Assembly (NCBI GenBank): GCA_976226885.1 | Contig: OZ320314.1 | Location: 13,764,001 to 13,828,000 of the forward strand | Direction: 5' to 3' | Source: Iphione sp. A-MEVVRFRX5 | Taxonomy: Eukaryota | DNA: 64,000 nucleotides | Shown: one piece after another, positions 6,600-38,600 of the stretch | Layout of the letters: each line of letters begins with the position of its first letter | Position numbering within the stretch: the first letter of the stretch is position 1 | Notes under the pieces: model-generated | Told to the model about the DNA's origin: nothing | Seen by the model: only the letters and a program-made list of their open reading frames with translations | The model's database searches: none | Position numbers and translations under genes: made by a program

Positions 6600-6960
6600 A
6601 GCATACCGCATTACTTGATTTGTCACATGATAGCATGCAGCATTGGTCAAAGTGTAATGTGATACCATAGAAGACAACTTGGCATATGGTTGGCATACAG
6701 TAATTGTCAATCTGTTATGTATTAACATACAACAATTAGTGAACTTAGTGATAGTATAAAACACTAGTTAACCTATTGTGTGATAGCATGTAGCATTGGA
6801 TGTTCTGTAGCATAATAGTTTAAGAGCATTGGTTAACCTGTCATCTGATAGCATATAGGATAGGTTGATCTGTTACATGATTGCTTTAAACATTGGTTGA
6901 TTGGTCATGTGAGAGCATACAGCATTTCTTTACCTGTTATATAACAGCATGCAGCACTTG
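6600..6960. repeat. Degenerate ~30-bp minisatellite just after the gene A stop (3'UTR); paralogous copy ~35270-35560
   Basis: Recurrent cattggttaacctgtcatgtgatagcatatag-like units, about 11-12 copies. Confidence 0.65.
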
Positions 6961-6973
6961 TCACTTGTCCCTG

Positions 6974-7024
6974 TCAATTGTTAAAACTCAGTCTGTCACA
7001 ATCCGACTGTTTTCTGAATTGGAG
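6974..7024 (-). CDS. Gene A exon 15 (LQFRKQSDCDRLSFNN*)
   Basis: ctgcag acceptor; TGA conserved in B. Confidence 0.75.
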   Translation of the reverse strand, partial: LQFRKQSDCDRLSFNN

Positions 7025-10000
7025 CTGCAGTAGCAAAAGTAATCAAAATATAGAACATTTTACCATTGAGCCCATTATATATTCTTCAAATGAAAATGGT
7101 CCTCTAAAACGGAATTGGACTTACCTTTACTTCTGTTACTTTTTCTTCTATTATTGTATAATCCCTGTAGTAATTACGCACCCATGGATGATATAACATG
7201 GATGATACTTGCATCCCCCGGGTGCACCCTACATATGCCATACCATAATAACAGAGCATTACGAAACTTCTGAAGACTGTACACTTATCGCAATACCTAT
7301 TCAATGTTTAACTATTTAGAAAGAAGAAAATTATATATACCTGAGAGATAAGGTGGTGAATACACTATATTAATGACTATTTATGATTTTTTTAAGAAAA
7401 AAGTGAATGCTCTAATTAAAGAACATTTAAGGATTTGATTAAGGAACATTTTATCAAAGAAATCTTTCTAAAAACCCTCACCTGTTAAGGCACTGACAAT
7501 CATACAGACAGCAAATGTGATGAGCATGGCGAATAATGCAAGCCACAGGTAGGATACAGAGTAAAACTTAATGAGGGGATTATCATACGGGCTGCAACAA
7601 ACAAAGACAGCAATCTTAAAATAGAATGACCAGATGTGACATTACAAATGAATGTGGCATCATATTCTGTATCTGTGATTAATATTGTGTTGAGCTGTAA
7701 CAGTAAATGAAGTACGCTAAACAGTTCTTGCTAGATGTATATATACCTGTTCCTTTTTACATATCTATTTGTTTGTCAAATGAAATGATCCTAAAATGGT
7801 GAAAATCCACACACTTTTATTGCATACAAATCAGATAGTTATCCTAATTATTATGGCTATTCATTTGAAATTGTAATATATGTACTAACATTTATTACAA
7901 TAAATCATGTTTCAGATTAATTTTTACTCTATGACTAATCTTTGGCAATGATCACCCATTGTTCCATCATCAGCAACCCAATCATCAGCAATTGATAACA
8001 TCTTTATTACTCGGTAACACTCAGACAAAAAAAAGACAGACTTGCCTTTGTCTAACCCTATGCTAACAGGCAAATGTTAGATTTTTTCCTTGACCCTTGG
8101 CAACCAATGGTACACTGTTTTGTAATTTGGGAGAAAAATGCTCATCTGAACAATGTAACAGGCACTGTTACCATACTTAGACCTAATTGATGAAACATAG
8201 TTTGTTTTTAGGGTTGACTACTTTACATGATAACATGCCATGTGGCTTTATACATACTAGTCTGGGGATATATTTGTTTAGTAAGCAGGTGTAATACCCC
8301 TGCTTCACTCATACATTTTTTTAACCTTATCCGGAAGAGTTACAAAGAACAGTAAGACATTTATGTCCTGTAATATCTTTTATTTCTTTCAATCTAAAAC
8401 CTTATACAGCCTATTAGTAACTGCTTTTGTTTCTTTTCCATCAGTTCTTCCCAGTGATGTCAGCAGATGTTTGGATCTTGACTCACTCTATTAGTTTTGT
8501 AAGCTAAGCTTCAGGAAATATGAGGATGCATTAGGAATCAGTATCCAATAATACCTTGCATTTCTGTCAAAAACATTGTCTATCTAATATGGCATCTCTT
8601 ACCAATATGTAAACTGCAAAGGGAGGAGGAGATTCTCTCTTACATTTGGTTTTAGTTGAAGAAAGCTCACAGCTTTTCAGGATTGACTGCAATAGTTGTT
8701 TGCAGGCTAAATGTATGACTTTTGTTTTTCAGGCTATAACAAATATTTTTCTGATTTAGTTATTTTTGTAGAAGCAGTGACCCTTAATGGTACTTTATTT
8801 TACTATGTGCCTCTTTGCCCTTGAGCTTGCATTTGATATCGCATAAATAGGCATACAGTCCACAGAACTTATCTCTCCAGTTTAAAAACCCAACAAACAC
8901 ATAATGTTTTCACAACTTTTTTAAAGGTCTCAAAAAAGCTGCAAATAATGTTATGAAATAATGTTTTTATAATGTTTCACACAACTTTTTAAAAGGTCTC
9001 TAAAAGAGCTTCATAAATTGTTATGAAAATTAATAACATTTTTACGTTTTCATAACATTCTTAAAAGGTTTCAAAAAAGCTGCAAATAAAGTTATGGTAT
9101 AATGTTTTTATGTTTTCACAACATTTTTAAAGGTTTGAAATAGAACTTCATGAAATGTAATGAAATAACATTTTTACAATGTTTTTACATTTATAAAATG
9201 TCTAAAAAGGCTGCAGATAATGTTTTGAAATTACATTTTTAAATTGTTTTAATAAGATTTTTAAAGATCTTGAAAGGAGGTCAAGGGAGATGGCAACATA
9301 TTAACCTGGTAAGAACAGGCAGACTCAGTGGCCAAATGGATAAGAGTGCTGACACCACCAGCAATGCAGAGGACATGGGTTCAAATCCCCAACAAGGCAA
9401 TATTTCACATCATGGAAAACCAAGACACTCCTTTATAAAAAGTTAAATTACATAAGAAAGGAGTATTCTAGGGAAGATAGAAGCATAAAGAGCAAAAAAG
9501 TATGATTTACATTTTGAATTTTGAAATTAAGATTATAATAAAATGTTTTGAAAAAGTTTTCCAAAAATGTTTTGAAAACATTTTTTGAAAACATTTTCAG
9601 AAAATGTTTCTTAAACATTTTCAAGACCATTCACTTCTATGTTTTTAACCCTTTGACGGCAGCATTGTAGTGTTGCGCATATCCTCCATGCAGCGGTACT
9701 TAGTAAAGGCGTAATCCGATAGAGGGCGAGACATGTACAGCGTCATCGCATAACGTACGTCATTGTGGTGAATCGGGATGGAGTTTTCATGTTTTAGGGA
9801 TATTATGGAATAGACATTATAAACTAATTGGATGCATTATTCTAAGGGATATTTCGAAATAATTAACTAAGAAATACATTCTGAATCATAAAGGATAAAT
9901 TTAATGCTTAAATGCACTACTCGCCGTCTCCACGGGAATGCCCTGATGCACTATTCACCCGGACCACGGGAATGTGTCAGTGCATTACTCGCCGTCAGAG

Positions 10001-13000
10001 GGTTAAAACTTTTTATAAAAACATTTTCAATTTTCCATTTAGGATAATGTTTTTTAAAAATGTTATTCTGGAGGCTCTATTCTGGAGAAGTTATACTCTC
10101 TCTTACAATAATGCATGCACCTTCTTACTACTTATATAAAGTATTAATTGGACCATTCCCAAATAATATAAATGGATAAATCTGTGTCTGGCCATCTTCA
10201 ATATAAATCTTTTGATAATGCTAACCATCTTTACAGAGTATATAAGCATCAATGTCAACTTTTTTAATAGAAAAAAAATAATGAGAAAGTCCATACTTAC
10301 TCAACTGAAGCCATAGCCATTGTGACATTTATTGACACAGTGGATAGAGCTGTCATGTTTGACATCCTAAAATCACATGTTGCTATGGTGGAATTGAGGA
10401 ATGTTCCCTGTAAATTGTTTGCATATGCTCCGAATCCCATCCAGGCTGCAAACACAAACCCTGAGATGCCTCCTACAGAAACACCCTATTAGAAAATTAC
10501 AGGGAAAAAACTCTTTTTGTCATGATTATGATGATGACATAATTATAAGTAAAAAACTGTTTTGAATGCAAATTGATCAAAAATGTAGATGAATAAAGAA
10601 ATTCTTACAATCCAGTTTATGAAGGGAATAAAAACTCCCAGAAGAAACATGGCTATGATTGGCCCTGAACATGCTCCAATGAATGTAGCCACTAGCTGTA
10701 TCAATGTTCCACCTAGTTGATCAACTCCAAGACCAAGGGCAGTAGAAGTTACACCTATTATCACAACTGAAAAGAGGAGGTATTCTAAAGAAATGACTTG
10801 GTTGAAAGTTGGTTTTCTTCTTCTCAATGGCCATACTTCCTATTACTTGGGCCAAGAAAAAATATATCTTAGTTTCTAATAATTTGACAAACCAAGTAGT
10901 TATGGAATATTTTACTTTGTCTTGTTTTGTAGATATCTTCAGAAAAAATGGGACTTTAGGGCCTTAGCTACCTACCAAATGTATCTTTTTAGCACTTAAC
11001 CAGAAACATGTACATGTCTATTTTTTCCTTTCACATATATGTTTATGCAGTGGAAACTTTGGTAAAAAACTAACATGGAATAATTGAATACACACTTGGA
11101 AATATGTCAGGACAGAGAACTGGTAACATGTGTCATATTGCTTCAAGACACTCTACATAACATGTAATAAAACCAGGTCTCGTGCATCATCTATGAGCAT
11201 GTGTGTTGCATTCATGAGAGAGAGGTGAGAGTCAACCGGAACTCAATGAAAGCCCCATAAAACATGATTTTGATGTTTTTAGCCATGCCCAGGTAAAGGA
11301 TGTGAATTCTTTTGTAGCAGTTAAGCCTCAACCCAAAACATTGTGTAGGAACTTAAACTTGTATTGTTTAGTCTCAGGCTGGAATTATTCCCACTTGAGA
11401 AGCAAATAGGTAGGACTCTTCTGGCTCAAGCCAGAAGGAGACAATTTAAGAGTTTTAAATTGTTTATACTTACGTGACCATGGCTAAGTTTAGAGTAAGA
11501 CTTTGTATATCACAGCACATTTTTTGTGAATAAACACAGTCTCTTACTGCACTTGAAGAGAATAACATCCAACACTTCTTTCCTGTGCAGACAGCTTTTA
11601 TATCAAAGCCAGCACTCATTCTACACCAAGCACAGGCTACACGTTTTTATTGGAAGACAGTTGTGAAGAAATATGGAAAATGAATTTGTAATTTAAGCTC
11701 TATTTTAATCAGAAGATTCCATCATGAACTTACCCAGTACTTTGGTTATGATGAGACCAGATGTCTCTGATACATTTGGCCATATTGCTTTCACAATGTC
11801 CTCATAGGCATTTGTAGCACCAGAGATCAGATTGGTGGATGCTGAGCTGTAATGATATTGCTATCGTTAATATTTTACCTAGGGACCAATAAAACCACCT
11901 TGCAAGTACATAGATATCATGTACTTTTCTGAGTATTTTACCTAATTATTTTAAGAGGCTTTACCTGAACATGTTCATATAAAGTACTACACAATTTGAT
12001 ATGATAACATGATATAATGGAAAACAGCAGACATAGGCTATACTTCTAGTCACATGTGGACACTTAATATGTCGATTCCAACATGAATCTACTTGAAACA
12101 AGCATGAAAATAGCTTGGGGGAGAGGGTATGTACATGTACATATTTCTATGTACACGTATATGTATACAAGTAGGAATATTTTATCATACACATTGACAT
12201 GCAGATTGAATAGTAGATAGATGAATAGAATGTGGCAAAAAGTCCATTTAGAGAGTTGTCTACTATTCCAGTGACTGTGCATATTTTGATTAAGCAAACT
12301 GAAAGTCTTTCAGATTTTACTCTATATCTTCATGCACATATACAGAACACAACAATTGAGATACTATGGAGAATGAAAAGCAAGAGGGTTTCCCATGCTG
12401 ACAATAGACCACATACCAGCCTGTTCACGAAAAATGAAGCCGTACTATAGCATCATTTCAAATCAGTAAACTTTAATATACTGAAGGGATTTTATCAAAC
12501 CTGAGTGAAGCAGCTAACATGCAGGCTATCAATATACCAGGTATTCCAGGAATATTCAAATCATGTATGATAAAATATGGAATGAGCTACAAAAGAGAAA
12601 CATTAAAGATGTTGGCAATACTCATGATGATAAAGAGTGCAGACTATATAAAAGATGCATAACTACATAATATAGTCATAACTGGGAATAACTGAATAAT
12701 CTCCATTGCAGGACTCTTTTGTCATAAATAGGACCTATCTATAGAGGGCTCATGGAAAAATGCATTCCTAGATTTTAATTTTTCTGCAGTCCTTAAAGTT
12801 ATATAATTATTTACATAACATACTTGGTTTGGATTGCCCACTTTCTTGCCTCTAATGGGATCACATCCTTTATATGTGTAGAAAGCAAACATGGACAGAC
12901 CAGATAATGCAGCAATGGTATGCCAGGCACAACTCACAACCAAAACAATCACCAGACATCTGCAATTTAATTGATGGCTTTTAGTTTGTTCATCGATTCA

Positions 13001-16000
13001 AGGAAGTACCACTATTATGCATTATATCATTAATAGTATTTACTGTGAATGAGAATCATTAGGCTGGTAATATTGCACATTTAATTTTTTGGCAGGGTAC
13101 AATCATTTATTATTGATACAAATGTACCATAATATATAAATTGGGCTGCAGTCTATTTTATTACAAACAAAACACATTGGACAACAGCATGGGAACCAAT
13201 TGTTAATTGTAAATTGTAAAATACCCAGTGAGTAAAATGTTATGTTTTGGTATTATGTAGATAGCTAGGCAACATCACAGACATGCATTACAGACACAGA
13301 CACCATAGTCCTAAGATGCCTCAGATGATGTATACCCAAGGCTTTGTATTGTAGTGACATAATGACATAGATCATAATTATGCTGGTGTCATGAACCTAA
13401 GCCTAGTGCTATGAAGTATTATGTTCAAGGGACCAATGCTGTTCATACAGAGTGAACCTTCCAGCTGACTACTGTGACAGGAGACCTGGCCTGGTCATGC
13501 CACACCAAAGGGCTATGAAAGTTTGTTAAATTAATTGAGGGTGTACAATGGGCAAACAACCAGGTCTTCACTCCTAAGTATAGCAAACATCCTCCTTTGG
13601 TTAAAAATCTGTATGGCCTGTGACCACCTTGGCATAGCTGTGGACTGTAATGGAAAGTGGGGATAGATTGCCATGTGATTTTAGTGTTCAACACTGACTG
13701 CATCTCCTCTGGGTTCATCAGGTGGCTCAACACCAGGATGCATGCCTTATCTGGGAAAACTACATTGAGTGCCAGAAACCAGTTCTGACTACCTTGGACC
13801 CATTCTCATGTTCCAGTCAGGCAATTTTCCTATCCAATGTAAAAGTTTTTCTTGGAAATAGAGAAATGGGTAGGAAACTTTTACTCTTTAAGTTGATAGT
13901 TCATTGAACTGTCAGACTCACAAGTTAAAACAATGTCTTAATAATCCTAACAACAGAGCAGCTCCATGACATGTGTGATCAGTCTAATCCATCTTTTTAC
14001 TAGGGTATGTACAAATAATATTCTCACTTCAAATTTGATTCTACACACAGCTTGAGAAGAATGCAGTTGATCACCTGTCCATTCATCTTAAGGTGGGTTG
14101 CTGAATCCTTCTCACATGAAAAGGCCTACACCTCCTTTTGCACATTTACTGAAAAAGGTCCCTATTGCCACCAGCAGTTTCTTTGTTTTTGCTGTCATTG
14201 AAGGATAATTGCTGGAGCATGTCAAAGATGTAGTAAGTGCCATTTCCCTTTCCTAGGATGATGAGACAAGCATTGATCTCACAACAATTTGTAAGCTCCT
14301 TTTCTTTTGGCATGAGTGCAATGCAATCTCACTGAGGCAGATGGTATACAAACCATTCTAGGTTTAAAATCTATATACACTTATTGTGAAACAAGGTTGA
14401 GCCCTCAACATAGTTCCCCTCCAAAATATATGAATCATAGCTCCCCTCAAAAATGCTGACAGCATACATACTTGACCTGGGAAATTAAGATCTCTCCCTA
14501 CTAAAAAACAAAGTGACCCCACCCTGAATGCATGCGATATAGTATACATGTATAAGAGCACACTCCTTCTGTTCTTCATCAATATCATGCAAATATACTA
14601 ATGGAAACCTGAATACATGAATTTTAAGCCTAATTCTTTCTTGGTCTTAGAGTCAGCTGGCACGATTGCACAGTGCCACATGTCATGCATGATCTGGAGC
14701 AGTCAGCTGATAATGCAATATGCTAGGTGCAGACAGTTTTGGACCTGTAGGAGCTTTCTGAGTGGATTTTGTCCCTCCCTGAGAGTCAGCTTATCTATAC
14801 TGGGAGCGACTTGAACCTCATTCATGCTGTTCTTCAGGCACTTCTAGCATCTTCTGCTGTGTGCCAATGACTGCCCCAAGTCACAGGACTGAAAGACAGA
14901 AGGGGCCAGTTCATAGAGGTGGATGTAACATAAGTATATATATATATAAATGTGTATACATTCCAGTCTGAGGTCTATCATTGCCAGGATCATATCCCTG
15001 GACCCTGCTCCTGTAAGTTGCTAATGGTATGGCCAAGAGACCCTTACCAATGCCCCATGACATTACCTAAGATGATGGTTTCTTTCAGGTTGCATGCAAC
15101 AATAGAGCAGTCCTGCAGAACTGTCATGCTGCTAATGCCAGGGCTTTTCATAGTGTCTGCCTTCTATCAGGTCATTACCAGAAGCCAGGGGTGAAATGGA
15201 CCAAACATGACATCTGATGTGGCTTCTTCATGGACAAAGTTATCTATTTGGTCAGGACATTTAGTGGTGCTAGGATGTTTCAGCAGGCTGCCAGTATGCC
15301 AGATTGGTAACACTTTGGGACATTACAATGTTTTTGAAGTATACACCTGATTGTTGGTGGTTTTGTTGACATTGAGCTTGTGTACCTCAAAAGAGTTTGT
15401 GCTTCACCATTTCAACAATGACACAATGAATTTCTAGTCCATTTTGTACATGCTTTCAGATAAAGGGGACTGATTTTGTAGGCAAAACAATCCTCATCAG
15501 GACACCTAACTCATTCAGTCTCGGGAGGAAGAAGACCTATTGCTTAAGATGACCATACCCCTGAGGTGGCAAATATCAGATGTGATGATGATTGACAGGC
15601 AGTGAACAACATTAGTGGAATGTGTAACAAGGCATGACAATTTTACTCAGTCTTCTTGCAAACACCTCTGATACCTGCAGTTACAGTGATTTAGCCATCA
15701 ATATATGGATGCACCAGTTGCTGGCTTTGGGGTTGGCCTCATCCAAAAAATCTTCTCAACAAACCCAGTGCCTCTTTTGAGGTTACAGGCAGTCACTGCC
15801 CAGCTTAGAGGGCCAATAATTGGATTCTGATATGTACAATCTGGCGAACAGGTACACAGACCCTCAACTATAGAGTTAGTTCCCAGTAGGGTTACAGGCT
15901 GCTGAAACCATTAGCCTAGCACATCCAAGAATAGGAACTATGCATATGCACAGAAAAGCTATAGGGCTCTATCGCTTACCCATTAAAGTGTACCAGACAG

Positions 16001-19000
16001 AGTCCTAATAAGCTCCTTCCCAAAGTGAGTTTTTGTCATGTCACATCGGGATTCAGATATCAGTTCTGACAATCACATTTTCAATGCCATATACTCTCCT
16101 TTTGCACCCTAAGGGAGGCTCTCTTACCTATTGCATTTGCATCAATGCTTTTATATGCACAGAAGAGACACCCCTTCAGGTCTAATAAACATGCATGATA
16201 TATGCTATACACATGCATATTAGAGACTGAAGTTTGAGCAGAGGGATGCTAGTCAGGTACAATTCACTGAAGTAAAACACTATTAATGATGCCTCTGGGA
16301 ACAAAGCCTGAGCCTACTTTTTACTCGACTGGATTTTGAGAAAAAATATTCAATAAGACAAGCCCAAAAGCACCAACTATATGGGAAGCTTGAGGCACTA
16401 AGGAGTCAAGATGTGGAAGAGTCTTCCACAGTCTGTTAAATCATAATTGAGAACAGACTATAAGAAGATTGTTGCTGCACAACATCAAAGGTAGTCCAAT
16501 AACTGTGAACTACTTCTGAGTACAGCAACTGGAATGTCATTTCTGTGGCAAGAGCAGAAGCTTCAATGAAGGGAAAAATATAGTTTATCACAGGATGAGC
16601 TATTTCCAGGGCATTTTCCTTCTATTACAGGCTTGGGTAATGAATGGTTATTGTCAGTGTTATTTTATACTAACATAGTTGAAAGAAGCTGAGCAAAGGA
16701 AAAAAATATTTAATCCCACAAAGAAAGACCTGTGAGACATCTGAGAAGATTAATAAAAATATCTAAAATTCAAATAAAAATTAGATTTTAATGTAAATCA
16801 TCAGTAACTCATGTAGTGTCATGAAAATTTGAGTGACAGTAATTTGTTAGGTATGGCAAATAGTTACCAGCTGGGAACTTACAGTTTAGCCATGCTCATT
16901 GTACGCACAGCAGAGTAGCGCTGCATTGAACTTTGTGATGTACCAAATCTTCCTATGTAATTTGCTCCTACTCCAAATGTACAGGTCCATATTGTATAGC
17001 GAATAGTTGGGTCAGCACTCACACTTGAAATGGTAGGAAAGAAAGTCTATAGTATTACATGCTTCTTTCATTTTCAACATGCCTGCAGACTATTTAAAAG
17101 AAGGTTGGATCTGACATTCTCCATTGTTTGCAATTAACAAATCTGTTCACCTCATGAACATCTACAAGAAAGCTATTTATTTAGGCAGGCTATATTTTTA
17201 TTTTTCAAGAGGCAAAATTAAGATTCTCTAGCTTAGCTGGATTTTGAGTGCTACATTGTAAGGAATGCACTTTGTATCAGACAGTGGTACTGGGAATTGT
17301 ACTAAAGGCATGATTATACTGGAAACATTGTATAGTGGAAACATTTAATTTTATGTAGGAATACAATTTTTAAAAAACACATGATTGATATCTCCACAAT
17401 ATTTGTAATATAGTATGACTCATACAAATATCAATCAAGTTGAATGCATGATTTAGAATAGATGTAGACCCATATACTCACCGGAAACCACAATCAAATG
17501 TATGTATCTAAACTGCATATGAGGGAAAAAATTTGTTTCCGATCGGGGTTTAGGTATGGACTTGTCACATACATAACTATAGTGTTTATCGATTCAAAGC
17601 AAATATTGCTAAAATTTAGTAAAGATAATTTTTTCTGACAGCCTGCTTTACCTGTATGTGTATTCTTCAACAACTTGATATAGACGCCTATGATCTATGA
17701 TTGTATACAATGATACCTTTGGTGACTTATTATCATATTTGCACATTACTGATCAAAGACCTACGTTTTATTTATAAGCTCATAAACTGTAGTTCTTTTT
17801 AAACTACTCGTATTAACAATGTCAATTCCAATCTATTATCAAAAGTGTACTTAGAGGTTTAGTTTATGATACTGTTATGGCCAGACCTTAACATACTGGA
17901 GGCAAACTCTCAAATAAAGTTTAGATGTTTATTCTTGAGAGGTAAGAATGCAACTGCACTTGCTTTTATACACACAGTCATAATGTGCAGAGCTAGCATG
18001 AGGAGTAAAATTACATGCTTACCGTGCTGAGTAACTCGGTGCAGAGTTTATTACTGCTCTGCACAACAATACAATAACTCTAAGCACCTTGAGAAAGTAA
18101 ACAATTTATGCTACATTTGTAGATAATAATGTTGTTTTGATAAAATTGAAATGACACACAGAAAATCTACATTGGCTTATGATTTCTAATAGTGATAATG
18201 AAATTATTTATCAATAAGCAGCATTTAAGACAACATTCTTGTTACACTGTTATTAGCAACCATCAAGAAAGCCTTTAACAAAGAAACTTTGCTTCCAGTA
18301 GTCTGTTGAGAACTGACACAGGCAATATGTTAGAGGTAATTTTCATTTTACCAGACAAATGTTCTGGTGAAAGATTAGACAGTGATTTCCAATCACAGAC
18401 CCATAATCATTCTTGCTTGAATCATAATGAAATTTCTATTATTTAAAGATTAATGATGCTTCATTTATTCTTAAAATATTAACATATCAATTTTCATTAA
18501 AGAGGTCAAATATCATGGTTGGGCAGGTTATTGGCAACAAAGATGTTTCCTAAACAGGCCTAGGCAAGAGACATCTGTATGAGCTTCTCATTTAAACTCA
18601 ACATTAGAAATCCAATACCTCTCATTATGCTAAATATGATGTATATACAGATACTTACTCAGCAATATTGTGTCGATCCCACATACCAGTAATAGCAAAA
18701 ACATCATCAATACCACCAACAGAATGTATAGCCTGAATAAAACAAAAGCTCCATATGAAGGTTACAATATACATAATATCTTTGACTTCAGGTGTTTCTT
18801 CTCAGAAACTGCCTAGTGATTTTACAATTATATTTCATGCCCAAAAATTTCACAAATGTTTAATTGGTTATTTTATCTATTTCTATTTCATTGCACAATG
18901 GCACTTGGCAAAGTCTTTGAATCATTTTTTGTTCAAATCTCTCACATCTATAATAATGCATAATATCTATACTTTTATGCAGAAAAATTTTAGTGAACTC

Positions 19001-22000
19001 TTATAATATGAGACCTAGTTCTCAATTTTACCACTATTTTTATATAGTTAATTATTTTGATAAAAAAGACATTATTCGAAAATTATTACTATGAATTATG
19101 TTACACCTTAAAAAAAGATAAAGTAAAATAAATGACAATATAGACGAAATATTATTGAAAATAAGCCTCTTGAGACTGCACACACATTTAAAAAACATTT
19201 ACTAACAAATGTCAATAGCATCACCTATTAGGTGAGGTCTCTGGAGACATGAGAAAGAGACATACGAAAGAGCAATGAACTGTTAGCTTTGGCCATTGTT
19301 AAAGAATAAACTTCCAGTCAGCATGAAATTCAATGGGTAATCTTTATTCCTGAGGAACATTCAGCAACAATATACATACACAACTGATTCAAACCTCTCT
19401 GCGAACATCACTCATATACAATCCAAAACTCCCTCTGCGGCCCTCCGCGGCCCTCCGCACCTCCGCAGAATGAACACTCCCTCCGCACAGCAAACACCCT
19501 CGGCTGAAACATGAACACCCGTCCCTCTGCTGACCCTCACAACAGAAGATTTGCATACAATGCCTCATTGAATAACAAGTATCAGCTGATACACCTCTAG
19601 AGACTAACATGCGAGAGGACAATGAATATGGATAGCAACAGGAGTTGAACAAGATAATGCACAGAATTGACTATAAGCATAAATTCATATTGACTGGTTG
19701 GGGGAGTGGTGAACTTCTCACCCTGTATCGTAAGCCTATACCACTGACTGCTCATGGCAAAACATAGCCGAGGATTCCAGTAAAGCACACACTGGCTATA
19801 ATAATACAGGAGCGCATCATGTATGCCTTCTATGAATTATGAGCAGATTTTGAAATTCTGTGTTACAAATCCATAATTTAACAATTCAATTCTTTCTCAC
19901 TTTAATTTGCTGTGAGAAATGGGTAAACGAAGAGATTCGCCTTCTCCATAACCGATATAAGGTGTCACTTCACTAATGCAATGAACATCAGTTCTGATCT
20001 CAAAAGGCAGAATAGGGAAGTGGTCTTAAAAATATTATGGATATGCATTGTCATGTGCAACCAGGGCTGAAATCCCTAAAATCTTTGGACAGAAGCCAAG
20101 AGGGCTGTCAAGTGAAATGATCAATGTTAACACAGAACAATCTGGTTAACTTCAATGCCAGACTTCTTTTTTATGTAACCCTCTCCAAATGCAGTGACAG
20201 ATTACCTGTGGCCTAATCGCTACAAACAGAACCTTGGTGGATTATGTAATACTGAATATTTAAATACATACAACACATTTTACTGTTTGCAATATTTCTT
20301 CATTTTGATGGTCCAACCAACTATTATCAGATCAACTTATTGGCAGCTGTGGCTCAGACTAACCTATCAGATAATATTATTGGAGCTACAAGTCTGATGA
20401 TGCCTATTCATCATACTATGTATATGACAAAGACTTAGTATAGCCACAAATGGTTGTATTGTGCAGGTGATCTGGTTACAATCATTGTCACAGTCCAAAA
20501 GAGAAAATGTGTTTTGGTAACAAGCCAAACATCAGCAGCTTGAAGTACAAAACACTGGCATTGCTGGCATTGTTTCTGTGTGTGTGTGTCATATGTTAAA
20601 ATTGGAGGGGGAAGTTATAGCAAAATATTTTTTACCTTTATGCATACTGTGAGTAGGCCAGCAACCATGACCATACATTGAAACACATCAGTCCATATGA
20701 CTGCTCTGATGCCACCCTTGGAAAAACAAATAGTACAGTACAGTGCAAACACAGATCTGAACATATGAACTCAGAGGGCAACCCCATATAAAAGACAAAA
20801 TGGGACATTAATCATACCCCATTTTAGTCTGTATGACTAGATCAGGTAAAAGGACATCTCATTATTAAGGGCAAAATTGCCTGGTCCCCTTAGTGTTCTT
20901 AAATTAGAGTTACTACTGTTTTTATTTACGATGAAGATATTCAGTAAATATTTTACTAGTACTTATGAGGCTAATTGTACTCACTAGGCATGTATAAATA
21001 GTAGTGATAACTCCTATGATCAACACCATGCCCCATACAGGGAATCCAGTCACTTGAAAATAGAAATAAAAAGAGGAGCTTCTGTGTATTTTGTACATAA
21101 CCTACCCCAACCAGAATAAAGTAGAAGAAATGTTAAGAATAAGAATAAGAATAATTTTATTGGACCTCTCCATTTGACGGAGCTATCATGGTACAATATG
21201 TATAGAAAAGTGAGTTATAAACGAGTTTGTGAAAAGAGTATAAAGGCAACTCATTTTGCTAATATGAAAAATTTGAAACTCACTTGCTTGCAAGGCTATG
21301 GATGGTCCAAAAAAGTCTATACATGTGACCAAAACCTGAAAGAGTTACAAATTACTGTCTAAAGATTGATTCTAAAGCACTTGGGGCTGTGGTGTACAGG
21401 TAGGTATTGTGAAGCTAAACATGACTGCATATAAATATCTGTTCAGATGACAACTCACATTTCCTTTGGACACTCAACTCTGAGTTAAAAATCAAATCAT
21501 TGAGGACAGTATTCTGGGAAGAGACCATGTCAACATAGACCCCCAAAGTATTTGGCCTTATAAAAAGGGATAGCGAAAAATGCTCAATAAGAAAAAGACC
21601 AGATCTTCCAGACCAACATTTGGTTTCTTCAACCAAATATCGCTTAACAGCTGTTTACAGGAACACTGGTTATCTGGAGTATGGCAAGTTTGATAAATCA
21701 GCATTATAGAAGTGGCAAACTTGATGGAAAAAATTCTAGTGAATTTGATGAGGTAAAGTCCTAATGGTTGCATATTTAATGAATAATCATTCTAACAGTC
21801 CCAGATATGATGAATATGTGTGAAAATGTGCAAATAAGGTAGACCTTTGCAGGATGTATCATCTATTCACATATATACTTTGCTTCAACAAAGCCAAGCT
21901 ACTAAATGCTACTTGCATATTTAGATGTGCTTGTGTTAAAATTTTGGTCAATGACCAACCCAAACATGGTGCAAATACACTGCAAATGTAATACAAGGAC

Positions 22001-25000
22001 ACAAGTATGAAAACCAGTAACATATGTTCTCAAATGTTCCATAAATAATGACACATATGCAAAGTGAAGTATATTCATAATAGTATGTGTGCTGGTGTCT
22101 GTTAAACTATTGATATTAAAAGAAGCTATTGTCATAAAATAATCACTTCATGAACCCTTATCAAATAACCATTTATAAACATCCTTTTCATATCATTCAT
22201 AATCTTGTTTGTGAAGAAAAATCTGATAGAAATGGAAAAAAACAACTTATAATAGTCTTAAACCTACCAGGTTTACTAAGCTTGCTGCACTTGCTAATAT
22301 TGCCACGAGTTTTGACTTGAACCGCAATTGAAGGTACTATAAAACATCACATACATTGCATGTATTAAATAATGTACTACAGACATATCACTGTGGTTAA
22401 TACTAGACAGGAGTCTAACCATACTCATGTATGTAAAGTCATTGTTTATTCTCAAAAATAAAGTTTGGTGATTATATGCGATTAACAATCAACATATGGA
22501 ATAGTATTAGTTGTTCCCTGAGCTCCTGATTTGTATCACCATATCATGAAGTTGAAATCTACATGTATCAGCATATCATTCTCATATGTGTTGTAGAAAG
22601 TGTACACACTACCTTGTTAGAGGGCAATATCATGAACCTAGCAGTTTATGCAGTAAGGAATTTAATAATACAACAGCATCACATATGTTACAGTAACATG
22701 ATAACATAATAAGAGAGAACTCTTTAATAAATATATGTATAGTGAACTGAAATCAGGTAGTTATAGCATAGTAGGAAGAACTTAATTAGGATACATATGC
22801 CTAAATATAAATGGATGTATGTGTGTGAGGGATTGATTAAACTTGACCACCATTATCAACATCAACAAATTCAATGTAAAGTCGATTCTATGTTTAACCC
22901 CTTCTGGACCACATCATTTCAGTAAACCACCTTAGTATAGCAGCATGTTTGAGTGTTTTCATTGATTTGATGGAACTAAGTATTATATCAACTTTATCTG
23001 TATACCAAATTACATTTCTCTAAATGAATATGGATGTCGATAAATAATTTTAGATGAATTAAAATGAAATTGTACTGTAAACACCACTGTTGCAATGTTT
23101 GCAGCATGTCAAAAGTTACATCACGAATGGAAAATGCTGGAAAATGCTGGAAACGCTGTACATACCTATATACACTATGCAAGAAGGTTATGAGTATGAG
23201 TCATATCAAAGACATCTGGTAAATTCTTGAATGATCAAATAGAGAGAGTATGACAAGTCGAATATGTCTCTGTGAATAGCCCGAAAGTGTTGCGTTATGA
23301 AATGACGTAACATTTGTTGAATCATTAGCATATGAACATGTTTATGTTAATATATCCAATATAATCCGGTATTATTTGGTCATGTGTATTGGGTATTCTT
23401 TTCTTTTGCAAATGTGCTCTGCATTCTTCATTGAAAAAATTATAATGCGCCACAGGAAAAGCAATATGTTGCTATGCAAACAATGAGATCATCGTGTGCA
23501 GAGCATCAATTTTAACCATGGAGGAGCTAAAGAAATGCATTTATTGACAAAGGGTGAATGCAAAATACATATCTAGATATACATGAGCTTGCATATATAT
23601 ACAACCAAAAATGTTATTACATGTAAGTCTGTAATCCTCAATGTTGTTATATATACCAAATCTGTGCCATTGTATCTGTGTTGTATATGGTGACACAAAG
23701 TACATTATATTCCAGTCTATCAATTCCTGATCCATTATTGGAGACAATAGAAAGGGGACAGAACAAACAGGCCATTTTTCGGAAATCGTACATCGCTACT
23801 AAGGTAACTTCAGACACGAAATTATTTTTTCCGGAATATTCCGTATGATCTTCATACATATAAGGAGGAAATGGTGTTGTTAGAGGATGAAATAATCCTC
23901 AAGTAGTAAAGCATTTGGTATGCATCTCAGCTTATAGATATCCATGTGTGTCTTTATAGCAGAAATACAAGGCAATATTTAAGCATATAGTTTTTGTCAT
24001 GCTTTGTAGTTTAGTGGCAACCTCAGTCGAGGGAACAAAACGTGTTCCTTCTATAAGTTTGGTCTGCAATAAGGGAACGCTTCCTTGCTGAGTCTCCAAA
24101 ATTATATGATGACCAGCATGAAAGAAAACCTGGTGTTAATACAGGTATGATATTAGTAAAACCTATGACATTTGACTTCCAGAAATTTCAGAATATTGAA
24201 ATTCACATTTTTCTTTGTTCAATCTGATCTAAGTCATACAGGCTTACCACATGATGTTGGAAGAACCTGTGGCAAGGACCAGCACTGAACATGTCTGCAG
24301 TATCTGGTCTGTAATAAGACATTGAGTGTCTCCCCATGAAAAGAACAGAAAAGTAAAATTACTGCTGAACTACTTCATGCTCTTGTCTCTCATTCCATCA
24401 AAGGCTGTGATGTGCCAAAGGATAAAGCAGTTCCTTATTGAGGTCATGCAGAGGTGAACATTGCAGAATGCGCGTTTGCAGCTCCAGACTCACTTGAACT
24501 CTTCTTGGAACTTGATGCAGCATACATGACAGTTACACCTCAAACCACAATTCTGTGGTAGGTGTTCTGTGTGATACTCGGCATCTGCTGATGCAACAGC
24601 TGACCTGGGACATACTGGAACATCCTCATCATCGTTTTTGTCTGCTAGCTGACGGACGAGTTCTTCTCAATATTGCAGTTGGCTGAATCAAAAAACGAAA
24701 GGAAACATTCAATAAAAAGTCCAGCAGTAAGCATGTTTACAACTAGACTTGCAGACCCCAGTTCAAAGACTTTATAATTTTTTCGGATATGCATCATGTG
24801 AGGAGGTAGTCTTCTAAATGCCTTTCATAGTAACACATTCCTTTGTCCAACAAATTATCCTCGTAATCGGAAATTTTTCTTGAGTTCTGCATCGAAAATC
24901 TTTTCTGTTATGTGAGAGCTACTTTGCAATAACTGTTATTCCAGAATAAATAAGACTTACAGCACAACGTTATCGACCCTTGTTGAGCCCTGGGAGCTGG

Positions 25001-25902
25001 GTGTATGTCCCTGCCCCTCAACCTCCGTTGGTTCATCATTATTTTCTGTCTATAAGCATGCATTCAGTTCTTCTCCTTCTCCTTCTTCTTCTTCTTCTTC
25101 TTCTTCTTCTTCTTCTTCTTCAGAAGATGACATTCCTCCATCATTTATTTAATTTATGGCCGTGATGTCCATCAATAGGAAATTAACTGCTGTACCCTTT
25201 TAGTGGCTGCCCTCGGTAATCTCTCCAAATTGCAATAGTGGACAAGTTCACACCACACACATATGACTTCATTACCAAGGTGATCACAGAGACATATTGT
25301 TAAATATTTCATATCTTTCTTCCAGAAGATACACTTTATTATCATTGTGAATAACAATCATCAAAAATTTAACAAATATGGTCTTTTACAACAGACACTG
25401 GTTCATTTAATCCATCATATGCTACCATACAATCCATCCACTGCATTCTGGAAGGGGATAAGCATCATCGGGAAGTGATATAATGATCTAGCGTTGGATT
25501 TATTAATGGCACCAACAATTTTTTCTCATGAGGACAATATTATGAATGAGTACATACCCTGTTAACACTTGTCAAGTTCAGAGGGTAAAACACTGGTACA
25601 ATAGTGATCCAGGCTATGATACATCCAAGAGTGAAACCTACTGGGAAAAGCATTAAAGCATTTCCCCTGGTGTATGCCTCAGCAGGGACCCCAAGTACCA
25701 AAACAGTAGAGAATAAAGATGCTGTAAAAGACAGTGCGATGGCAATCACATTTAGGTTTCTGTTCCCAACAAGATACTCGCGTGTTGACTTGGTATGTCT
25801 TGTTCTGTATGCAAAAACAGAGCCTATGATGACAGTGATGCCTAGTGTCCCAGCAAGCAGGACATATTCCACCCAATGCAAAGTTTCCGGAGCACTCATC
25901 AT
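6974..25902 (-). CDS. Gene A span: sodium:solute symporter, SLC5A5/6/8/12 (NIS/SMVT/SMCT)-like, 15 coding exons, 589-590 aa
   Basis: Exons 25902-25558, 22336-22268, 21335-21284, 21052-20985, 20716-20636, 18732-18659, 17023-16883, 12959-12824, 12586-12501, 11846-11734, 10766-10609, 10485-10301, 7591-7482, 7228-7125, 7024-6974. All introns GT-AG, phases compatible, 1773 nt from the first ATG. SSS motifs: EYLVGNRN, LGVPAEAY, YLQLRF, GGIRAVIWTDVFQ, QSSMQRY, GCDP..NPNQLIPYF, PGIPG, YSVSYLW. Confidence 0.93.
7125..7228 (-). CDS. Gene A exon 14 (CTRGMQ...TEVK)
   Basis: tag acceptor, GTAAGT donor, phase 1 to 0. Confidence 0.8.
7482..7591 (-). CDS. Gene A exon 13 (PYDNPLIKFYSVSYLW...SALT)
   Basis: ttgcag/GTGAGG; last TM with SYLW motif. 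Confidence 0.9.
9322..9410 (+). mobile_element. tRNA-derived SINE head (Pol III A and B boxes)
   Basis: A box TGGCCAAATGG 9329-9339, B box GGTTCAAATCC 9378-9388; I could not fold a complete cloverleaf, so not called a tRNA gene. Confidence 0.6.
9649..10002. mobile_element. Non-autonomous piggyBac-type MITE, 354 bp
   Basis: TTAA at 9645-9648 and 10003-10006; TIR CCCTTTGACGGC / CCCTCTGACGGC (11/12). Confidence 0.88.
10301..10485 (-). CDS. Gene A exon 12 (GVSVGG...MASV)
   Basis: tag/GTAAGT; loop with three N-glycosylation sequons (NST, NMT, NVT). Confidence 0.9.
10609..10766 (-). CDS. Gene A exon 11 (VIIGV...GGTLIQ...FINWI)
   Basis: ttttcag/GTAAGA; lies within track ORF 10543-10827. Confidence 0.92.
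11734..11846 (-). CDS. Gene A exon 10 (SASTNLISGATNAYED...KVL)
   Basis: ttacag/GTAAGT; Na2-site helix. Confidence 0.92.
12501..12586 (-). CDS. Gene A exon 9 (LIPYF...PGIPG...AASLS)
   Basis: ttgtag/GTTTGA. Confidence 0.92.
12824..12959 (-). CDS. Gene A exon 8 (CLVIV...GCDP...NPNQ)
   Basis: ttgcag/GTATGT; AKL-to-SGL spacing matches SMCT-type sequences. Confidence 0.9.
13980..15290 (-). mobile_element. Highly degenerate DIRS/Ngaro-like retrotransposon RT-RNaseH relic in intron 7
   Basis: Frameshifted remnants HPS...PDQIDNFVHEE...GPF, IGKG.LLA...YR, GAVIGT..MLEVPEE, KLLQV.NC.H.A, and an RNaseH-like tail (..LKLCVESN...YIP). Parts also present in B (~41540-41700). Confidence 0.5.
16883..17023 (-). 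CDS. Gene A exon 7 (VSADPTIRYTIW...QSSMQRY...AKL)
   Basis: ttcaag/GTAAGT. Confidence 0.92.
18659..18732 (-). CDS. Gene A exon 6 (AIHSVGG...HNIA)
   Basis: ttcag/GTAAGT. Confidence 0.88.
20636..20716 (-). CDS. Gene A exon 5 (GGIRAVIWTDVFQ...CIK)
   Basis: SSS signature motif; ccaag/GTAAAA. Confidence 0.95.
20985..21052 (-). CDS. Gene A exon 4 (TGFPVW...IYTCL)
   Basis: ttcaag/GTGAGT. Confidence 0.92.
21284..21335 (-). CDS. Gene A exon 3 (VLVTCIDFFGPSIALQA)
   Basis: tttcag/GTGAGT. Confidence 0.9.
22268..22336 (-). CDS. Gene A exon 2 (YLQLRF...VNL)
   Basis: ttatag/GTAGGT; YLxxRF motif. Confidence 0.92.
22898..25457 (-). mobile_element. piggyBac transposon, internally deleted relic, 2560 bp, in gene A intron 1
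   Basis: TTAA 22894-22897 and ATAA 25458-25461; TIR CCCCTTCTGGA / CCCCTTCCAGA; empty TTAA site in B near 51140; acidic N-terminal remnant (MSSSEEEE...); C-terminal Cys-rich remnant CHVC...C...CNVHLC...RNCFILWH at ~24410-24540. Confidence 0.85.
25068..25121. repeat. (CTT)n microsatellite, poly-Glu in the piggyBac relic
   Basis: Direct reading. Confidence 0.95.
25558..25902 (-). CDS. Gene A coding exon 1 (MMSAPETLHW...LTSVNR)
   Basis: ATG at 25902 or 25899; upstream acceptor taactag ending at 25928; GTATGT donor. Confidence 0.93.
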
Positions 25903-35623: not shown

Positions 35624-38600
35624 CTGCAGTAGCAAAAGTAAGGGAAATGTGAAACATTTTACCACTGTGCCCATTGTATATTCTTCAAATGAAAAAGGTC
35701 CTCTAAAATAGGATTGGACTTGCCTTTATTTCTGTAATTTTTTCTTCCATTATTGTATAATCCCTGTAGTAATTACGCAACCATGGATGATATAACATGG
35801 ATGATACTTGCATCCCCCTGGTGCACCCTATATATGCCGTACCATAATAACAGAGCATTAAGAAATTTTTGAAGAATGTACACTTATGGCAATACCTATT
35901 CAATGTTAAACTATTTAGAAAGAAGAAAATTATATATACCTGAGAGATAAGGCAGTAAATACACTATTTTAATGACTATTGATAATTTTTTAATGAAAAA
36001 TTGAATGCTCTAATTAAAGAACATTATTTTAAGGATTTGGTTAAGAAACATTTTATCAAAGAAATCTTTCAAAGAATCATCACCTGTTAATGCACTGACA
36101 ATCATACTGACAGCAAACGTGATGAGCATGGAGAAAAATGCTAGCCACAGGTAGGATACTGAGTAAAACTTAATGAGGGGATCATCATAGGTTCTGCAAC
36201 AAACAAAGACAGCAATTCTAAAATAGAATGACCAGATGTGACATTACAAATGAATGTGGCATTATATTCTGTATCTGTGATTAATACTGTGTTGAGCTGT
36301 AAAAGGAAATGAAGTAGGCTAAACTTTTCTTGGTAGATGTATATATACCTGTTCTTTTTTACATATATTTGTTTGTCAAATAAAATTATCCTAAAATGGT
36401 GAAAATCCACACACTTTTATTGCATACAAATTAGATAGTTATCCTAATTATAATGACTATTCATTTAAAATTATAATATATGTACTGGCATTTATTACAA
36501 TAAATCATGTTTCAGATTAATTGTTACTCTATGATTCATATGACAATGATCACCCATTGTTCCATCATCAGCAACCCAATCACCGGCAATTGATAACAGA
36601 TTAATCACTCGTTAACACTCAGAGAAAGAAAGACATCTTTGTCTAACCCTAAGATAACAGGTTAATATTAGTTTTGTGCCTTGATTTTGGGCTACAATCG
36701 TAAAAAGTTTCGTAATTTTGAAGAAGTTCCATAGAATAAGACCATGGGGTACTGCAAGTGAGGTAGGACTAATGCCTTAAAGTGTTGTGTTTTGTGCTAA
36801 ATGGCAGGATCAGTTTGCTCCTCCCGATCTTAAATGCAACCAACCACATTTTGGCCTTTACTTCCTTCAGTGTCCCTGTGAATTTGAGGCATGCGTTAAT
36901 GGCATAGCCTAGCAACTTCAGGCATGTCATCATGGCCAGATTAGTTACGTTCAGCTTGATTTCCAACTGGGTATTGGCAGCTTTGCCCACCAATATTTAG
37001 CTACATTTCTGCTCACTTAGCATCAGGCTGACACTACTGCACCACCCTAAGATTGTATTCACCATATGCTGGGTGGAGCCTCTTAGTCTTAGCAGGTCCC
37101 TTGCCACTACCAGTATGCTCAGATCATCCGCGCAGAGTACTGCACTTCTTTCTTCTGGCAGACATTGGATGACCTCATCCATTATGATGCAGAAGGCACT
37201 TGCGCCAAACAAGGACCCCTGGGGATGCCATGCTTTTTGTGTCTTACACTTGAATCCTGACCTCTGCATCTCACAAACTGTAGTCTGTCTGTGAAGTAGC
37301 CTGTGACAACTCTGCATATTTCAATACTTGCTCCGGCCTGCCATAGGCGCCTGACCACCCTGTAGGCTGGCACCAGGTCAAATGTCTTTTTCATGTCAAA
37401 TGTGAGGATGTTGCAGTACAGGCCTTTATTCATCTGCTTGGCTCAGTAGAGACACAATGGCAGTTTCATTTCATTATCTATGTGTAAAACCATCGCCTTG
37501 TGGCCTGTATAAAGCAGTGATTATGATAGGTTTCCTTTTCCTAGCCTTTAGACTCAAGGATAAGCTCTTTCAAAGCTGAGTATTTTTTTTTTTTTTTACT
37601 CTGGAGAAGTTATATAATGCATGCACCTTCTTCCTACTTTTATAAAGTGTTTTGAAGTGTTAATTAGACTAATCCAAAATAATTTGAATGGGTAAATCTT
37701 TTATGGCCATCTTCAATATTAATCTTTTAATAATGACGAAGAGAGTAATATAAGCATCAATGTGAATGTTTTTAAATAGAAACATTTTATGAGAAATTAC
37801 ATACTTACTCAACTGAAGCCATGGTCATTGTGACATTTATTGATAAAGTGGATGTTTCTGTCATGTTTGATATGCCAATGTCACATGTTTCTATGGTAGA
37901 ATTGAGGAATGTTCCCTGTAAATTGTTTGCATATGCTCCAAATCCCATCCAGGCTCCAAAAACGAACCCTGAGATGCTTCCTACAGAAACGCCCTATTAG
38001 AGAATGATACAAAAAAAATTTCCTTTTAGCTCTGATAATGATGATTTCATAAAAGCAAAAAATTATTTTGAATGTAAATTGATGAAAAATGCAGATAGAC
38101 AAAGAAATTCTTACAATCCAGTTTATGAAGGGAACAAAAACTCCAAGAAGAAACATGGCTATGATTGGTCCTGAACATGCTCCACTGAATGTAGCAATAA
38201 GCTGAATCAATGTTCCACCTAGTTGCTCAACTCCAAGACCAAGGGCAGTAGAAATTACACCTATGATCACAACTGAAAGATGAGGTATTCTTAAGAAATG
38301 ACTTGGTTGAAAGCAGGTTTTCAGGCAAAGAAATATATATGTTTGCAGTAATTGGATGAACCAAGTACTGATGGAATATTTTACTTTGTCTTGCTTTGTT
38401 GCTATCTTCAGGAAAACCAGGGACTCAGGGCCTTAGTTACCTACCAAACACATCTTTTCAACACCTTACCAGAAACATTTACATGTATGTTTTTCACATC
38501 CACATATATGTTTTTGCAGTGGGATATTTTGTGGAATACCGACATGTAAAATTATGAGAAAACAGAACTTGAAAATAATTATGTCAGCACAGAGATATGG

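What the first reader, a model, noticed from the sequence alone, without database searches (positions are those of the whole stretch)
21284..21335. Burst of radical amino-acid changes in exon 3 (TM4)
Seen: A GTC ACA TGT ATA GAC TTT (VTCIDF) vs B AGA ACA GGC ATG TGT CTT (RTGMCL, within 49253-49304). Ten nucleotide differences fall in five codons, all changing the amino acid; the other 12 codons have one silent change. Neighbouring exon 4 has one aa change in 22. Established (from memory): this helix lines the substrate site, and SiaT uses a TM3 (LeuT numbering) Arg135 to bind the substrate carboxylate. By eye B Arg140 aligns with that Arg and NIS Y144. A loses it and gains Asp one turn later. 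Inference: positive selection or specificity switch, from an anion binder (B) to something else (A).
Basis: partly seen in the sequence, partly recalled or inferred. Interest (0 to 1): 0.8.

Follow-up and report, generated by a model that had tools for sequence, protein, structure and literature searches.

The report
Diverged substrate-pocket helix in twin transporters
Two intact, side-by-side copies of a sodium-coupled transporter gene in an invertebrate differ most sharply in a six-codon stretch of the helix that touches the cargo, part of a wider remodelling of the cargo pocket that probably gives the copies different cargo or sodium use, though this is untested.

Summary
Exon 3 (52 nt, minus strand) of two tandem SLC5 (SMCT/SMVT/NIS-clade) genes differs by 10 nt in 18 (VTCIDF in A, RTGMCL in B). 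The other 34 nt differ once. This is the densest window in the gene (permutation P=0.0017). All three triple-difference codons of the gene lie in this helix, on both sides of intron 2.

The alignment claim holds: B Arg140 / A Val141 = NIS Y144 = SMVT Y156 = SiaT R135, a residue that contacts bound Na+ or the substrate carboxylate.

- Outgroups carry Y, N or V here, never Arg.
- At nucleotide level B's tract is the more derived.
- A keeps an older Arg at the neighbouring inner-gate position on TM6 (SMVT L270), where B has Leu.
- So B probably moved the Arg, and A gained Asp145.

Ten of 17 positions equivalent to SMVT pocket or gate residues differ between A and B, against 15.6% overall (P=4e-5). 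Both genes are open and constrained (dN/dS 0.33, symmetric rates).

Positive selection is not shown: the tract evolves at about the local synonymous rate. A DNA-level block replacement or conversion from an unseen paralog is not excluded. No RNA runs were listed.

The scan had noted the Arg shift separately on this same window (s1-329384).

The parts
21284..21335 (-). Gene A exon 3 (52 nt), encoding VLVTCIDFFGPSIALQA, the centre of TMS4 (LeuT TM3)
   Evidence: AG/GT borders and open frame. A same-length exon is present in related genes.
21312..21329 (-). A tract VTCIDF. V141 codon 21327-21329 (NIS Y144 position), C143 codon 21321-21323 (NIS G146 position), D145 codon 21315-21317 (NIS V148 position).
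49253..49304 (-). Gene B exon 3 (52 nt), encoding VLRTGMCLFGPSIALQA
49281..49298 (-). B tract RTGMCL. R140 codon 49296-49298, in the column of NIS Y144 / SMVT Y156 / SiaT R135.
22268..22336 (-). Gene A exon 2. Its last codons (SLVNL, against SITKL in B) form the N-terminal part of the same helix and are also diverged, including one triple-difference codon.
50479..50547 (-). Gene B exon 2, the counterpart of gene A exon 2
16883..17023 (-). Gene A exon 7 (TM6 region). The R255 codon is 16948-16950 and is equivalent to SMVT L270 / NIS M258, an inner-gate residue.
43129..43269 (-). Gene B exon 7. The L254 codon is 43194-43196, at the position where A, L002, L004 and Owenia P0163 have Arg.
10609..10766 (-). 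Gene A exon 11 (TM10). The I418 codon is 10678-10680 and is equivalent to SMVT F431 / NIS F417, an inner-gate residue.
38115..38272 (-). Gene B exon 11. The S417 codon is 38184-38186, at the same gate position.
25558..25902 (-). Gene A exon 1 (start codon, TM0 to TM2). The L63 codon is 25714-25716, equivalent to SMVT F79 / NIS F67.
51243..51584 (-). Gene B exon 1. The I62 codon is 51399-51401.
7482..25902 (-). Gene A, coding exons 1-13. The 3' end is unresolved. The candidate next exon is 7125-7228, or a short terminal exon with a stop just upstream of it.
36084..51584 (-). Gene B, coding exons 1-13

Best explanation
The window holds two intact tandem genes for sodium:solute symporters of the SLC5 family, in the clade of SMCT1, SMVT and NIS. 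They are 84% identical in protein.

[quoted passage not shown] That residue touches the bound Na+ or the substrate carboxylate and forms the inner gate together with one residue each from TM1, TM6 and TM10.

The six-codon burst is the sharpest part of a remodelling of that pocket.
- B carries Arg at the TM3 gate position, the position of the carboxylate-binding Arg135 of bacterial SiaT, and Leu at the TM6 gate position.
- A carries Val at the TM3 position, keeps an older Arg at the TM6 gate position, and has gained an Asp one helical turn above it on the pocket-facing side.

Shown here: the sequence differences, the column equivalences, the enrichment at pocket positions, and the intactness and overall constraint of both genes.

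Inferred: the two proteins differ in substrate preference and/or Na+ coupling. B would be an anion binder with a SiaT-like Arg. A would have an Arg/Asp pocket. The differences would be kept by selection.

The mutational origin of the 18-nt tract, whether many single hits or one block event, is unresolved.
For: Gene integrity and family:
- The gene models have open frames and 12 canonical GT-AG introns each.
- Pfam SSF scores above cutoff for exon 1 of both genes.
- The best solved homologs are SMCT1, SMVT and NIS.

Position equivalences:
- TM3, TM6, TM10 and TM1/TM2.

Pocket divergence:
- All four inner-gate equivalents differ between A and B: L/I, V/R, R/L, I/S.
- Ten of 17 SMVT pocket or gate equivalents differ against a 15.6% background, hypergeometric P=4e-5.
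- No Arg at the TM3 position and no Asp or Glu at the V148 position occur among the metazoan relatives sampled. Arg there occurs only in a SiaT homolog.

Constraint on both copies:
- Overall dN/dS is 0.33.
- Relative rates are symmetric, 14:12 with L002 as outgroup.

Pattern of the divergence:
- It spans intron 2, with triple-difference codons in both exon 2 and exon 3. This points to the helix as the unit rather than one DNA event.
- Outside this helix, pN in exons 2-4 is about 0.035, against 0.38 inside it.
Against: No functional or expression data exist. No sequencing run was listed for this DNA.

The outgroups are distant, 35-47% identical, so the polarity is weak.

Tract pN (0.52) is not significantly above the local synonymous divergence of about 0.41. 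Neutral drift in a locally unconstrained stretch, or a single block mutation, would give the same picture.

Five of six consecutive residues changed, which is all round the helix and not only the pocket face. Only the first is a documented ligand contact.

Seven of the ten pocket differences are conservative (L/I, V/I, L/V, F/L, N/S, Y/F, V/I).

No 3D model of A or B could be made here, so the Arg-Asp proximity and the pocket orientation of D145 are geometric inference.
Confidence: 0.55

Rival explanations
1. This is a DNA-level block event. The 18-nt tract, most likely in B, was replaced in one step by a short gene-conversion tract from a more divergent SLC5 paralog elsewhere in the genome, for instance in the third tandem unit beyond the window. 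Alternatively it arose from a multi-nucleotide or templated repair event, and it need not reflect adaptive change.
For: - Two codons in the tract differ at all three positions, although gene-wide dS is only 0.25.
- The B tract aligns to the A tract hardly better than a shuffled tract does (P=0.175).
- The B tract shares only 4/18 nt with L001, while the flanking 34 nt are 33/34 identical between A and B.
- B's G142 and L145 match the wider-family consensus (xTGxxL) and not its closest relatives.
- Synonymous divergence of exons 2-4 is 3.5-fold that of exons 5-13 (P=9e-5), and intron identity rises from about 75% at the 5' end to about 90% at the 3' end. Both fit a mosaic, conversion-prone locus.
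Against: - No donor was found in the 64-kb window: no hit within 3 mismatches and none at 14/18 or better within 3.5 kb on either side.
- No third exon-3 copy is present.
- Micro-inversion is not supported (shuffle P=0.34), and neither is a compensated frameshift.
- The divergence also covers the end of exon 2, 930 bp upstream, while intron 2 between them is ordinarily similar at 76%. One short tract therefore cannot explain it all.
- A canonical donor would carry Tyr at the first position, not Arg.
- This rival concerns origin only. It does not exclude a functional consequence.
Confidence: 0.25
2. This is relaxed constraint or incipient loss of function. One copy is redundant, and its pocket helix is drifting without a new function.
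For: - The tract evolves at about the local neutral rate.
- A charged residue appears in mid-helix in each copy, and a family-conserved Tyr and Gly are lost in A.
- In NIS, charged substitutions at the pocket positions tested, Y144 among them, abolished iodide transport.
- No RNA evidence could be obtained.
Against: - Both ORFs are open through 13 exons with canonical splice sites.
- dN/dS is 0.33 overall.
- Amino-acid changes are symmetric between A and B relative to outgroups, 14:12 and 5:3.
- The rest of exons 2-4 is strongly constrained, with pN about 0.035.
- The changes are concentrated at pocket positions rather than spread.
Confidence: 0.12
3. This is chance clustering of ordinary substitutions in a stretch that happens to tolerate change, with no special meaning.
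For: - By amino-acid count alone a 5-of-6 window arises in 15% of permutations.
- The same tract also varies a little (I/L, I/V) between a pair of tandem paralogs in another species.
- The tract varies among subfamily members.
Against: - The nucleotide permutation gives P=0.0017.
- All three triple-difference codons of the gene lie within 10 codons of each other.
- Pocket enrichment gives P=4e-5.
Confidence: 0.08

Closest known systems
SMCT1 (SLC5A8, PDB 7SL9), SMVT (SLC5A6, PDB 26va) and NIS (SLC5A5, PDB 7UUY/9zfl)
   Same: These are the best solved homologs of the exon translations (E 1e-13 to 1e-8 for exon 1). The helix order is the same. The TM1 kink motif (S..S), the FGP/YAP motif after the tract and the TM6 G-x-x-Q...QRY motif are all present.
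   Different: Identity is only about 35%. The inner-gate Tyr (NIS Y144, SMVT Y156) is Val in A and Arg in B. The TM6 gate residue (SMVT L270, NIS M258) is Arg in A. The TM10 gate Phe is Ile in A and Ser in B. The NIS Q72 position is Leu in both. Substrates are unknown.
SiaT, the Na+/sialic acid symporter of Proteus mirabilis (PDB 5NV9)
   Same: B has Arg in the column of SiaT Arg135. In SiaT that residue forms a salt bridge to the substrate carboxylate, and the R135E mutant does not transport.
   Different: SiaT is a distant bacterial relative. phmmer places R135 in a 3-residue insertion. The equivalence rests on the ungapped alignment through the SiaT homolog P0194. By my mapping, the SiaT partner Thr63 corresponds to Leu in B. 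The resemblance would be convergent.
Invertebrate 'sodium-coupled monocarboxylate transporter 1-like' proteins (molluscs, Owenia fusiformis) and unnamed genes on ENA assembly ERZ25767047 (L001, L002, L004, L005)
   Same: They share the family and, where seen, the exon layout, including a 52-nt exon 3. L002, L004 and Owenia P0163 share A's Arg at the TM6 gate position.
   Different: At most 47% identity in exon 1 and 35-40% overall. None has Arg at the TM3 position or Asp at the V148 position.

Membership tests
SLC5 / sodium:solute symporter family (Pfam PF00474 SSF) | Match to the SSF profile above the curated cutoff | tested here: met
   Exon 1 of A scores 32.2 bits and exon 1 of B scores 34.8 bits, against a cutoff of 22.8. 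The other exons are too short to score alone.
SLC5 / sodium:solute symporter family (Pfam PF00474 SSF) | Closest solved structures are SLC5 members over several separate exons | tested here: met
   Exon 1, exon 7, exon 11 and exon 13 weakly all hit SMCT1, SMVT or NIS. Exons 8 and 10 alone gave nothing.
SMCT/SMVT/NIS clade (SLC5A5/6/8/12-like) | Nearest named relatives belong to this clade | tested here: met
   Named hits are 'sodium-coupled monocarboxylate transporter 1/2-like' or 'multivitamin transporter' from molluscs, annelids and arthropods. Identity to B is 34-40%.
SMCT/SMVT/NIS clade (SLC5A5/6/8/12-like) | Aromatic inner-gate or ligand residue on TM3 (NIS Y144, SMVT Y156) | tested here: not met
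   A has Val and B has Arg. The family column reads Y 46, F 8 and W 6 of 80 sequences.
SiaT-type carboxylate site | Arg on TM3 at the R135 column | tested here: met
   This is met for B only. B R140 shares the column with the Arg of P0194, which aligns ungapped to SiaT R135. The pairwise phmmer alignment disagrees by 3-4 residues. A has Val.
SiaT-type carboxylate site | TM1 hydroxyl partners (SiaT Ser60, Thr63) | tested here: inconclusive
   By transitive mapping (SiaT S60 = NIS S69 = B S64; SiaT T63 = NIS Q72 = B L67) one of the two partners is present. The SiaT to vSGLT step of the mapping rests on my own knowledge of the Na2 site, not on a tool alignment.
Positively selected site cluster | Nonsynonymous rate above the synonymous rate in the tract | tested here: inconclusive
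   pN is 0.52 in the tract against a gene-wide pS of 0.21 (Fisher P=0.018). The local pS of exons 2-4 is about 0.41-0.43, so omega is about 1.2 and not significant. A branch-site test is not possible without close orthologs.
Gene-conversion tract from another paralog | A donor sequence carrying the tract | tested here: not met
   No donor lies in the 64-kb window. The rest of the genome could not be searched, so this holds for the window only.
Pseudogene | Broken frame, lost splice sites or neutral evolution of one copy | tested here: not met
   The frames are open, all introns are GT-AG, dN/dS is 0.33 and rates are symmetric. Expression could not be tested.

The most novel reading that the evidence does not exclude
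A buried pocket arginine has hopped between two contacting inner-gate positions, from TM6 (kept in A) to TM3 (in B). B thereby converges on the bacterial SiaT solution for binding a carboxylate, or uses the guanidinium in place of the Na+ that NIS holds at S69/Q72/Y144, which would change Na+ stoichiometry. A pairs its Arg with a new Asp and shifts to a zwitterionic or cationic cargo. That would be a natural two-step experiment in re-wiring charge within a LeuT-fold substrate site.
Probability: 0.15. Interest if true: 0.65.

Novelty: new variant of a known kind. Interest (0 to 1): 0.4.

Why it matters
If the inference holds, this recent paralog pair (84% identical) isolates a handful of pocket residues that set cargo or ion coupling in the SLC5A5/6/8 clade. 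That clade includes the iodide, vitamin and short-chain fatty-acid transporters. The pair offers ready-made reciprocal swaps (TM3 Arg against TM6 Arg, plus or minus Asp) for testing how charge placement at the inner gate controls anion recognition and Na+ stoichiometry. If it does not hold, this is an ordinary diverging tandem duplicate in a lineage-specific transporter expansion.

Tried and rejected
- **Mutually exclusive or third exon-3 copy.** The conserved 28-nt half occurs only twice, and tblastn found no extra exons.
- **Local donor for a templated mutation.** Neither 18-mer has a match within 3 mismatches in the window, or at 14/18 or better within 3.5 kb on either side.
- **Micro-inversion.** The best reverse-complement match is 10/18, shuffle P=0.34.
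- **Compensated frameshift.** A gapped alignment barely improves the match, and the B tract aligns no better than shuffles (P=0.175).
- **RNA or DNA sequencing runs.** None was listed for exons 2-5 or for exon 1.
- **Close orthologs.** The exhaustive representative search found nothing above 47% identity and the word search nothing above 40% overall. The genome itself is not in the protein collections, so codeml or MEME was not feasible.
- **Third tandem unit.** Only its edge lies in the window, and neighbouring windows cannot be queried.
- **PDB mapping of exons 8 and 10.** No usable hits. The SMVT residues Q301, L305 and Y527 were therefore left out of the pocket test.
- **First Pfam call.** It failed on a frame error and was repeated correctly.

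Full report
**What is there**

The window has no N runs. It holds a tandem duplication of about 28 kb. Each unit carries one minus-strand gene.

I built both gene models from frames conserved between the units and from splice sites. Each has 13 coding exons, every intron is GT-AG, and the frames are open.
- Gene A runs 25902 to 7482.
- Gene B runs 51584 to 36084.
- The 3' end beyond exon 13 is unresolved. A conserved candidate exon lies at 7125-7228, and an alternative short terminal exon lies just upstream of it.

Exon 1 of both genes matches Pfam SSF above the cutoff. The best solved homologs are SMCT1, SMVT and NIS. The nearest database relatives are invertebrate 'SMCT1-like' proteins at 34-40% identity overall, and exon-1 fragments at up to 47%. 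Other notes of the scan call the genome invertebrate, annelid-like. I did not test that.

**The observation**

A and B are 84.4% identical in protein and 89% in coding DNA, with dS 0.25 and dN 0.08. Exon 3 is 52 nt in both. The 18-nt tract reads VTCIDF in A and RTGMCL in B and holds 10 differences. The other 34 nt hold one silent difference.

It is the most divergent 6-codon window of the gene. The permutation P is 0.0017 by nucleotides and 0.15 by amino-acid count.

The last codons of exon 2, 930 bp upstream, encode the preceding turn of the same helix and are also diverged (SLVNL against SITKL). The only three codons of the gene that differ at all three positions are 135, 140 and 144, in B numbering.

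**Where it sits in the protein**

Through a relative (P0078), phmmer aligns this stretch without gaps to NIS and SMVT. B R140 / A V141 corresponds to NIS Y144 and SMVT Y156. G142/C143 corresponds to NIS G146. C144/D145 corresponds to NIS V148.

For SiaT, phmmer puts R135 in a 3-residue insertion. However, a clear SiaT homolog (P0194, E 3e-96, ungapped around R135) places its Arg in the same alignment column as B R140. I take that ungapped solution as the better one for the middle of a helix.

The literature gives these roles:
- NIS Y144 (TMS4) coordinates a Na+ together with S69 and Q72, and stabilises the TMS2 kink. Charged substitutions at the pocket positions tested abolished transport (bioRxiv 10.1101/2022.04.07.487502; 10.1101/2025.10.07.681042).
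- SiaT R135 forms a salt bridge to the Neu5Ac carboxylate, and R135E is dead (PMC5931594).
- SMVT Y156 hydrogen-bonds the biotin carboxylate, Y156A is dead, and Y156 forms the inner gate with F79, L270 and F431 (PMC13454448).

**Polarity**

I recovered the homologous 52-nt exon from four loci of an unnamed ENA assembly and from one Logan transcript.
- At the Y144 position these carry Y, N, N, Y and V.
- At the G146 position they carry S, A, A, S and A.
- At the V148 position they carry V, I, V, V and V.

In 80 wider relatives the first column is Y, F or W in 60. It holds no Arg or Lys in any metazoan sequence. The V148 column holds no Asp or Glu.

At nucleotide level the A tract shares 10/18 with L001, as much as L001 shares with L002. 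The B tract shares only 4/18. Site by site, five differences are B-derived, one is A-derived, three are ambiguous, and one changed in both lineages.

The outgroups are distant, so the conclusion is tentative.

**The wider pattern**

The scan's separate note on this window (s1-329384) pointed to an Arg difference in exon 7. I mapped it. A R255 / B L254 corresponds to SMVT L270 and NIS M258, one of the four inner-gate residues that pack with Y156.

L002, L004 and Owenia P0163 also have Arg there, so this Arg is the older state and B lost it.

The other two gate equivalents also differ: F79 is L in A and I in B, and F431 is I in A and S in B.

I took the pocket and gate residues listed in the SMVT paper that I could map (17 positions). 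Ten of them differ between A and B, against 15.6% for the whole protein, hypergeometric P=4e-5. Seven of those ten are conservative changes.

Each paralog keeps exactly one Arg at the base of the pocket, on different helices. A adds an acidic residue four positions after V141, so on the same helical face. That last point is geometric inference.

**Are both genes alive?**

The frames and splice sites are intact. dN/dS is 0.33. Derived changes are symmetric, at 14 against 12 with L002 as outgroup and 5 against 3 with L001. Nothing marks A as decaying. Expression could not be tested, because no run was listed.

**Selection or mutation?**

Tract pN is 0.52. That exceeds the gene-wide pS of 0.21 (P=0.018). 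But synonymous divergence in exons 2-4 is itself high, at pS 0.43 against 0.16 in exons 5-13 (P=9e-5). Locally omega is therefore about 1, and positive selection is not shown.

Intron identity runs from about 75% at the 5' end to about 90% at the 3' end. This suggests a mosaic history, either 3' homogenisation or an older 5' segment.

The B tract is hardly more similar to the A tract than a shuffled tract is (P=0.175). A block replacement or a short conversion from an unseen paralog therefore remains possible.

I found no donor, no third exon copy, no inversion and no frameshift signature in the window. The involvement of exon 2 across an ordinarily conserved intron argues against a single short event. 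Whatever its origin, the surrounding codons are tightly constrained: pN is about 0.035 in exons 2-4 outside this helix.

**Verdict**

The feature is real and correctly located. Its meaning is best read as pocket divergence between two functional SLC5 paralogs. B is the likelier innovator at the Arg site, and A at the Asp site.

Selection, substrate and expression remain untested.

Noticed in passing
window 20985-22336 vs 49072-50547 (exons 2-4 of A and B): Synonymous divergence in exons 2-4 (pS 0.43) is about 2.7 times that of exons 5-13 (pS 0.16; Fisher P=9e-5). It also exceeds the divergence of the flanking introns, about 24%. Exon 4 has 9 silent differences and 1 amino-acid difference in 22 codons. 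This suggests a mosaic history of the duplicated unit.
   Followed up: partly
window 3700-8100 vs 33000-36700: The 3' ends of the two units are 88-92% identical, introns included, with a 75-nt stretch fully identical at 7154-7228. The 5' parts are only about 75-80% identical. This fits gene conversion homogenising the 3' end, or units of mixed age.
   Followed up: partly
window 61755-62230, 31856-32021, 61-378 and 2560-2725: A weakly similar element (68-73% identity) recurs at about 29-30 kb spacing. The window end therefore probably enters a third tandem unit, whose gene lies beyond the window.
   Followed up: partly
window 20717-20984 vs 48967-49071 (intron 4) and intron 5: Intron 4 is 268 nt in A and 105 nt in B, with no real similarity (47% identity). 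Intron 5 is 1.9 kb against 3.9 kb at 51% identity. These are local sequence replacements or insertions next to the diverged exons.
   Followed up: no
L002:10004-19615 and L004:10103-18052 (ENA ERZ25767047, one contig, about 44 kb apart): Another species has its own tandem pair of this subfamily. The two exon-3 copies differ at two amino acids (I/L, I/V), both inside the same six-codon tract. Both genes have Arg at the TM6 gate position and Lys at the TM10 gate position (SMVT F431 equivalent).
   Followed up: partly
window 7125-7228 and about 7330: The end of the gene model is ambiguous. A short exon ending in a stop directly follows an AG about 140 nt after exon 13. A longer, strongly conserved candidate exon (35 codons, GTAAGT donor) lies at 7125-7228.
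   Followed up: no
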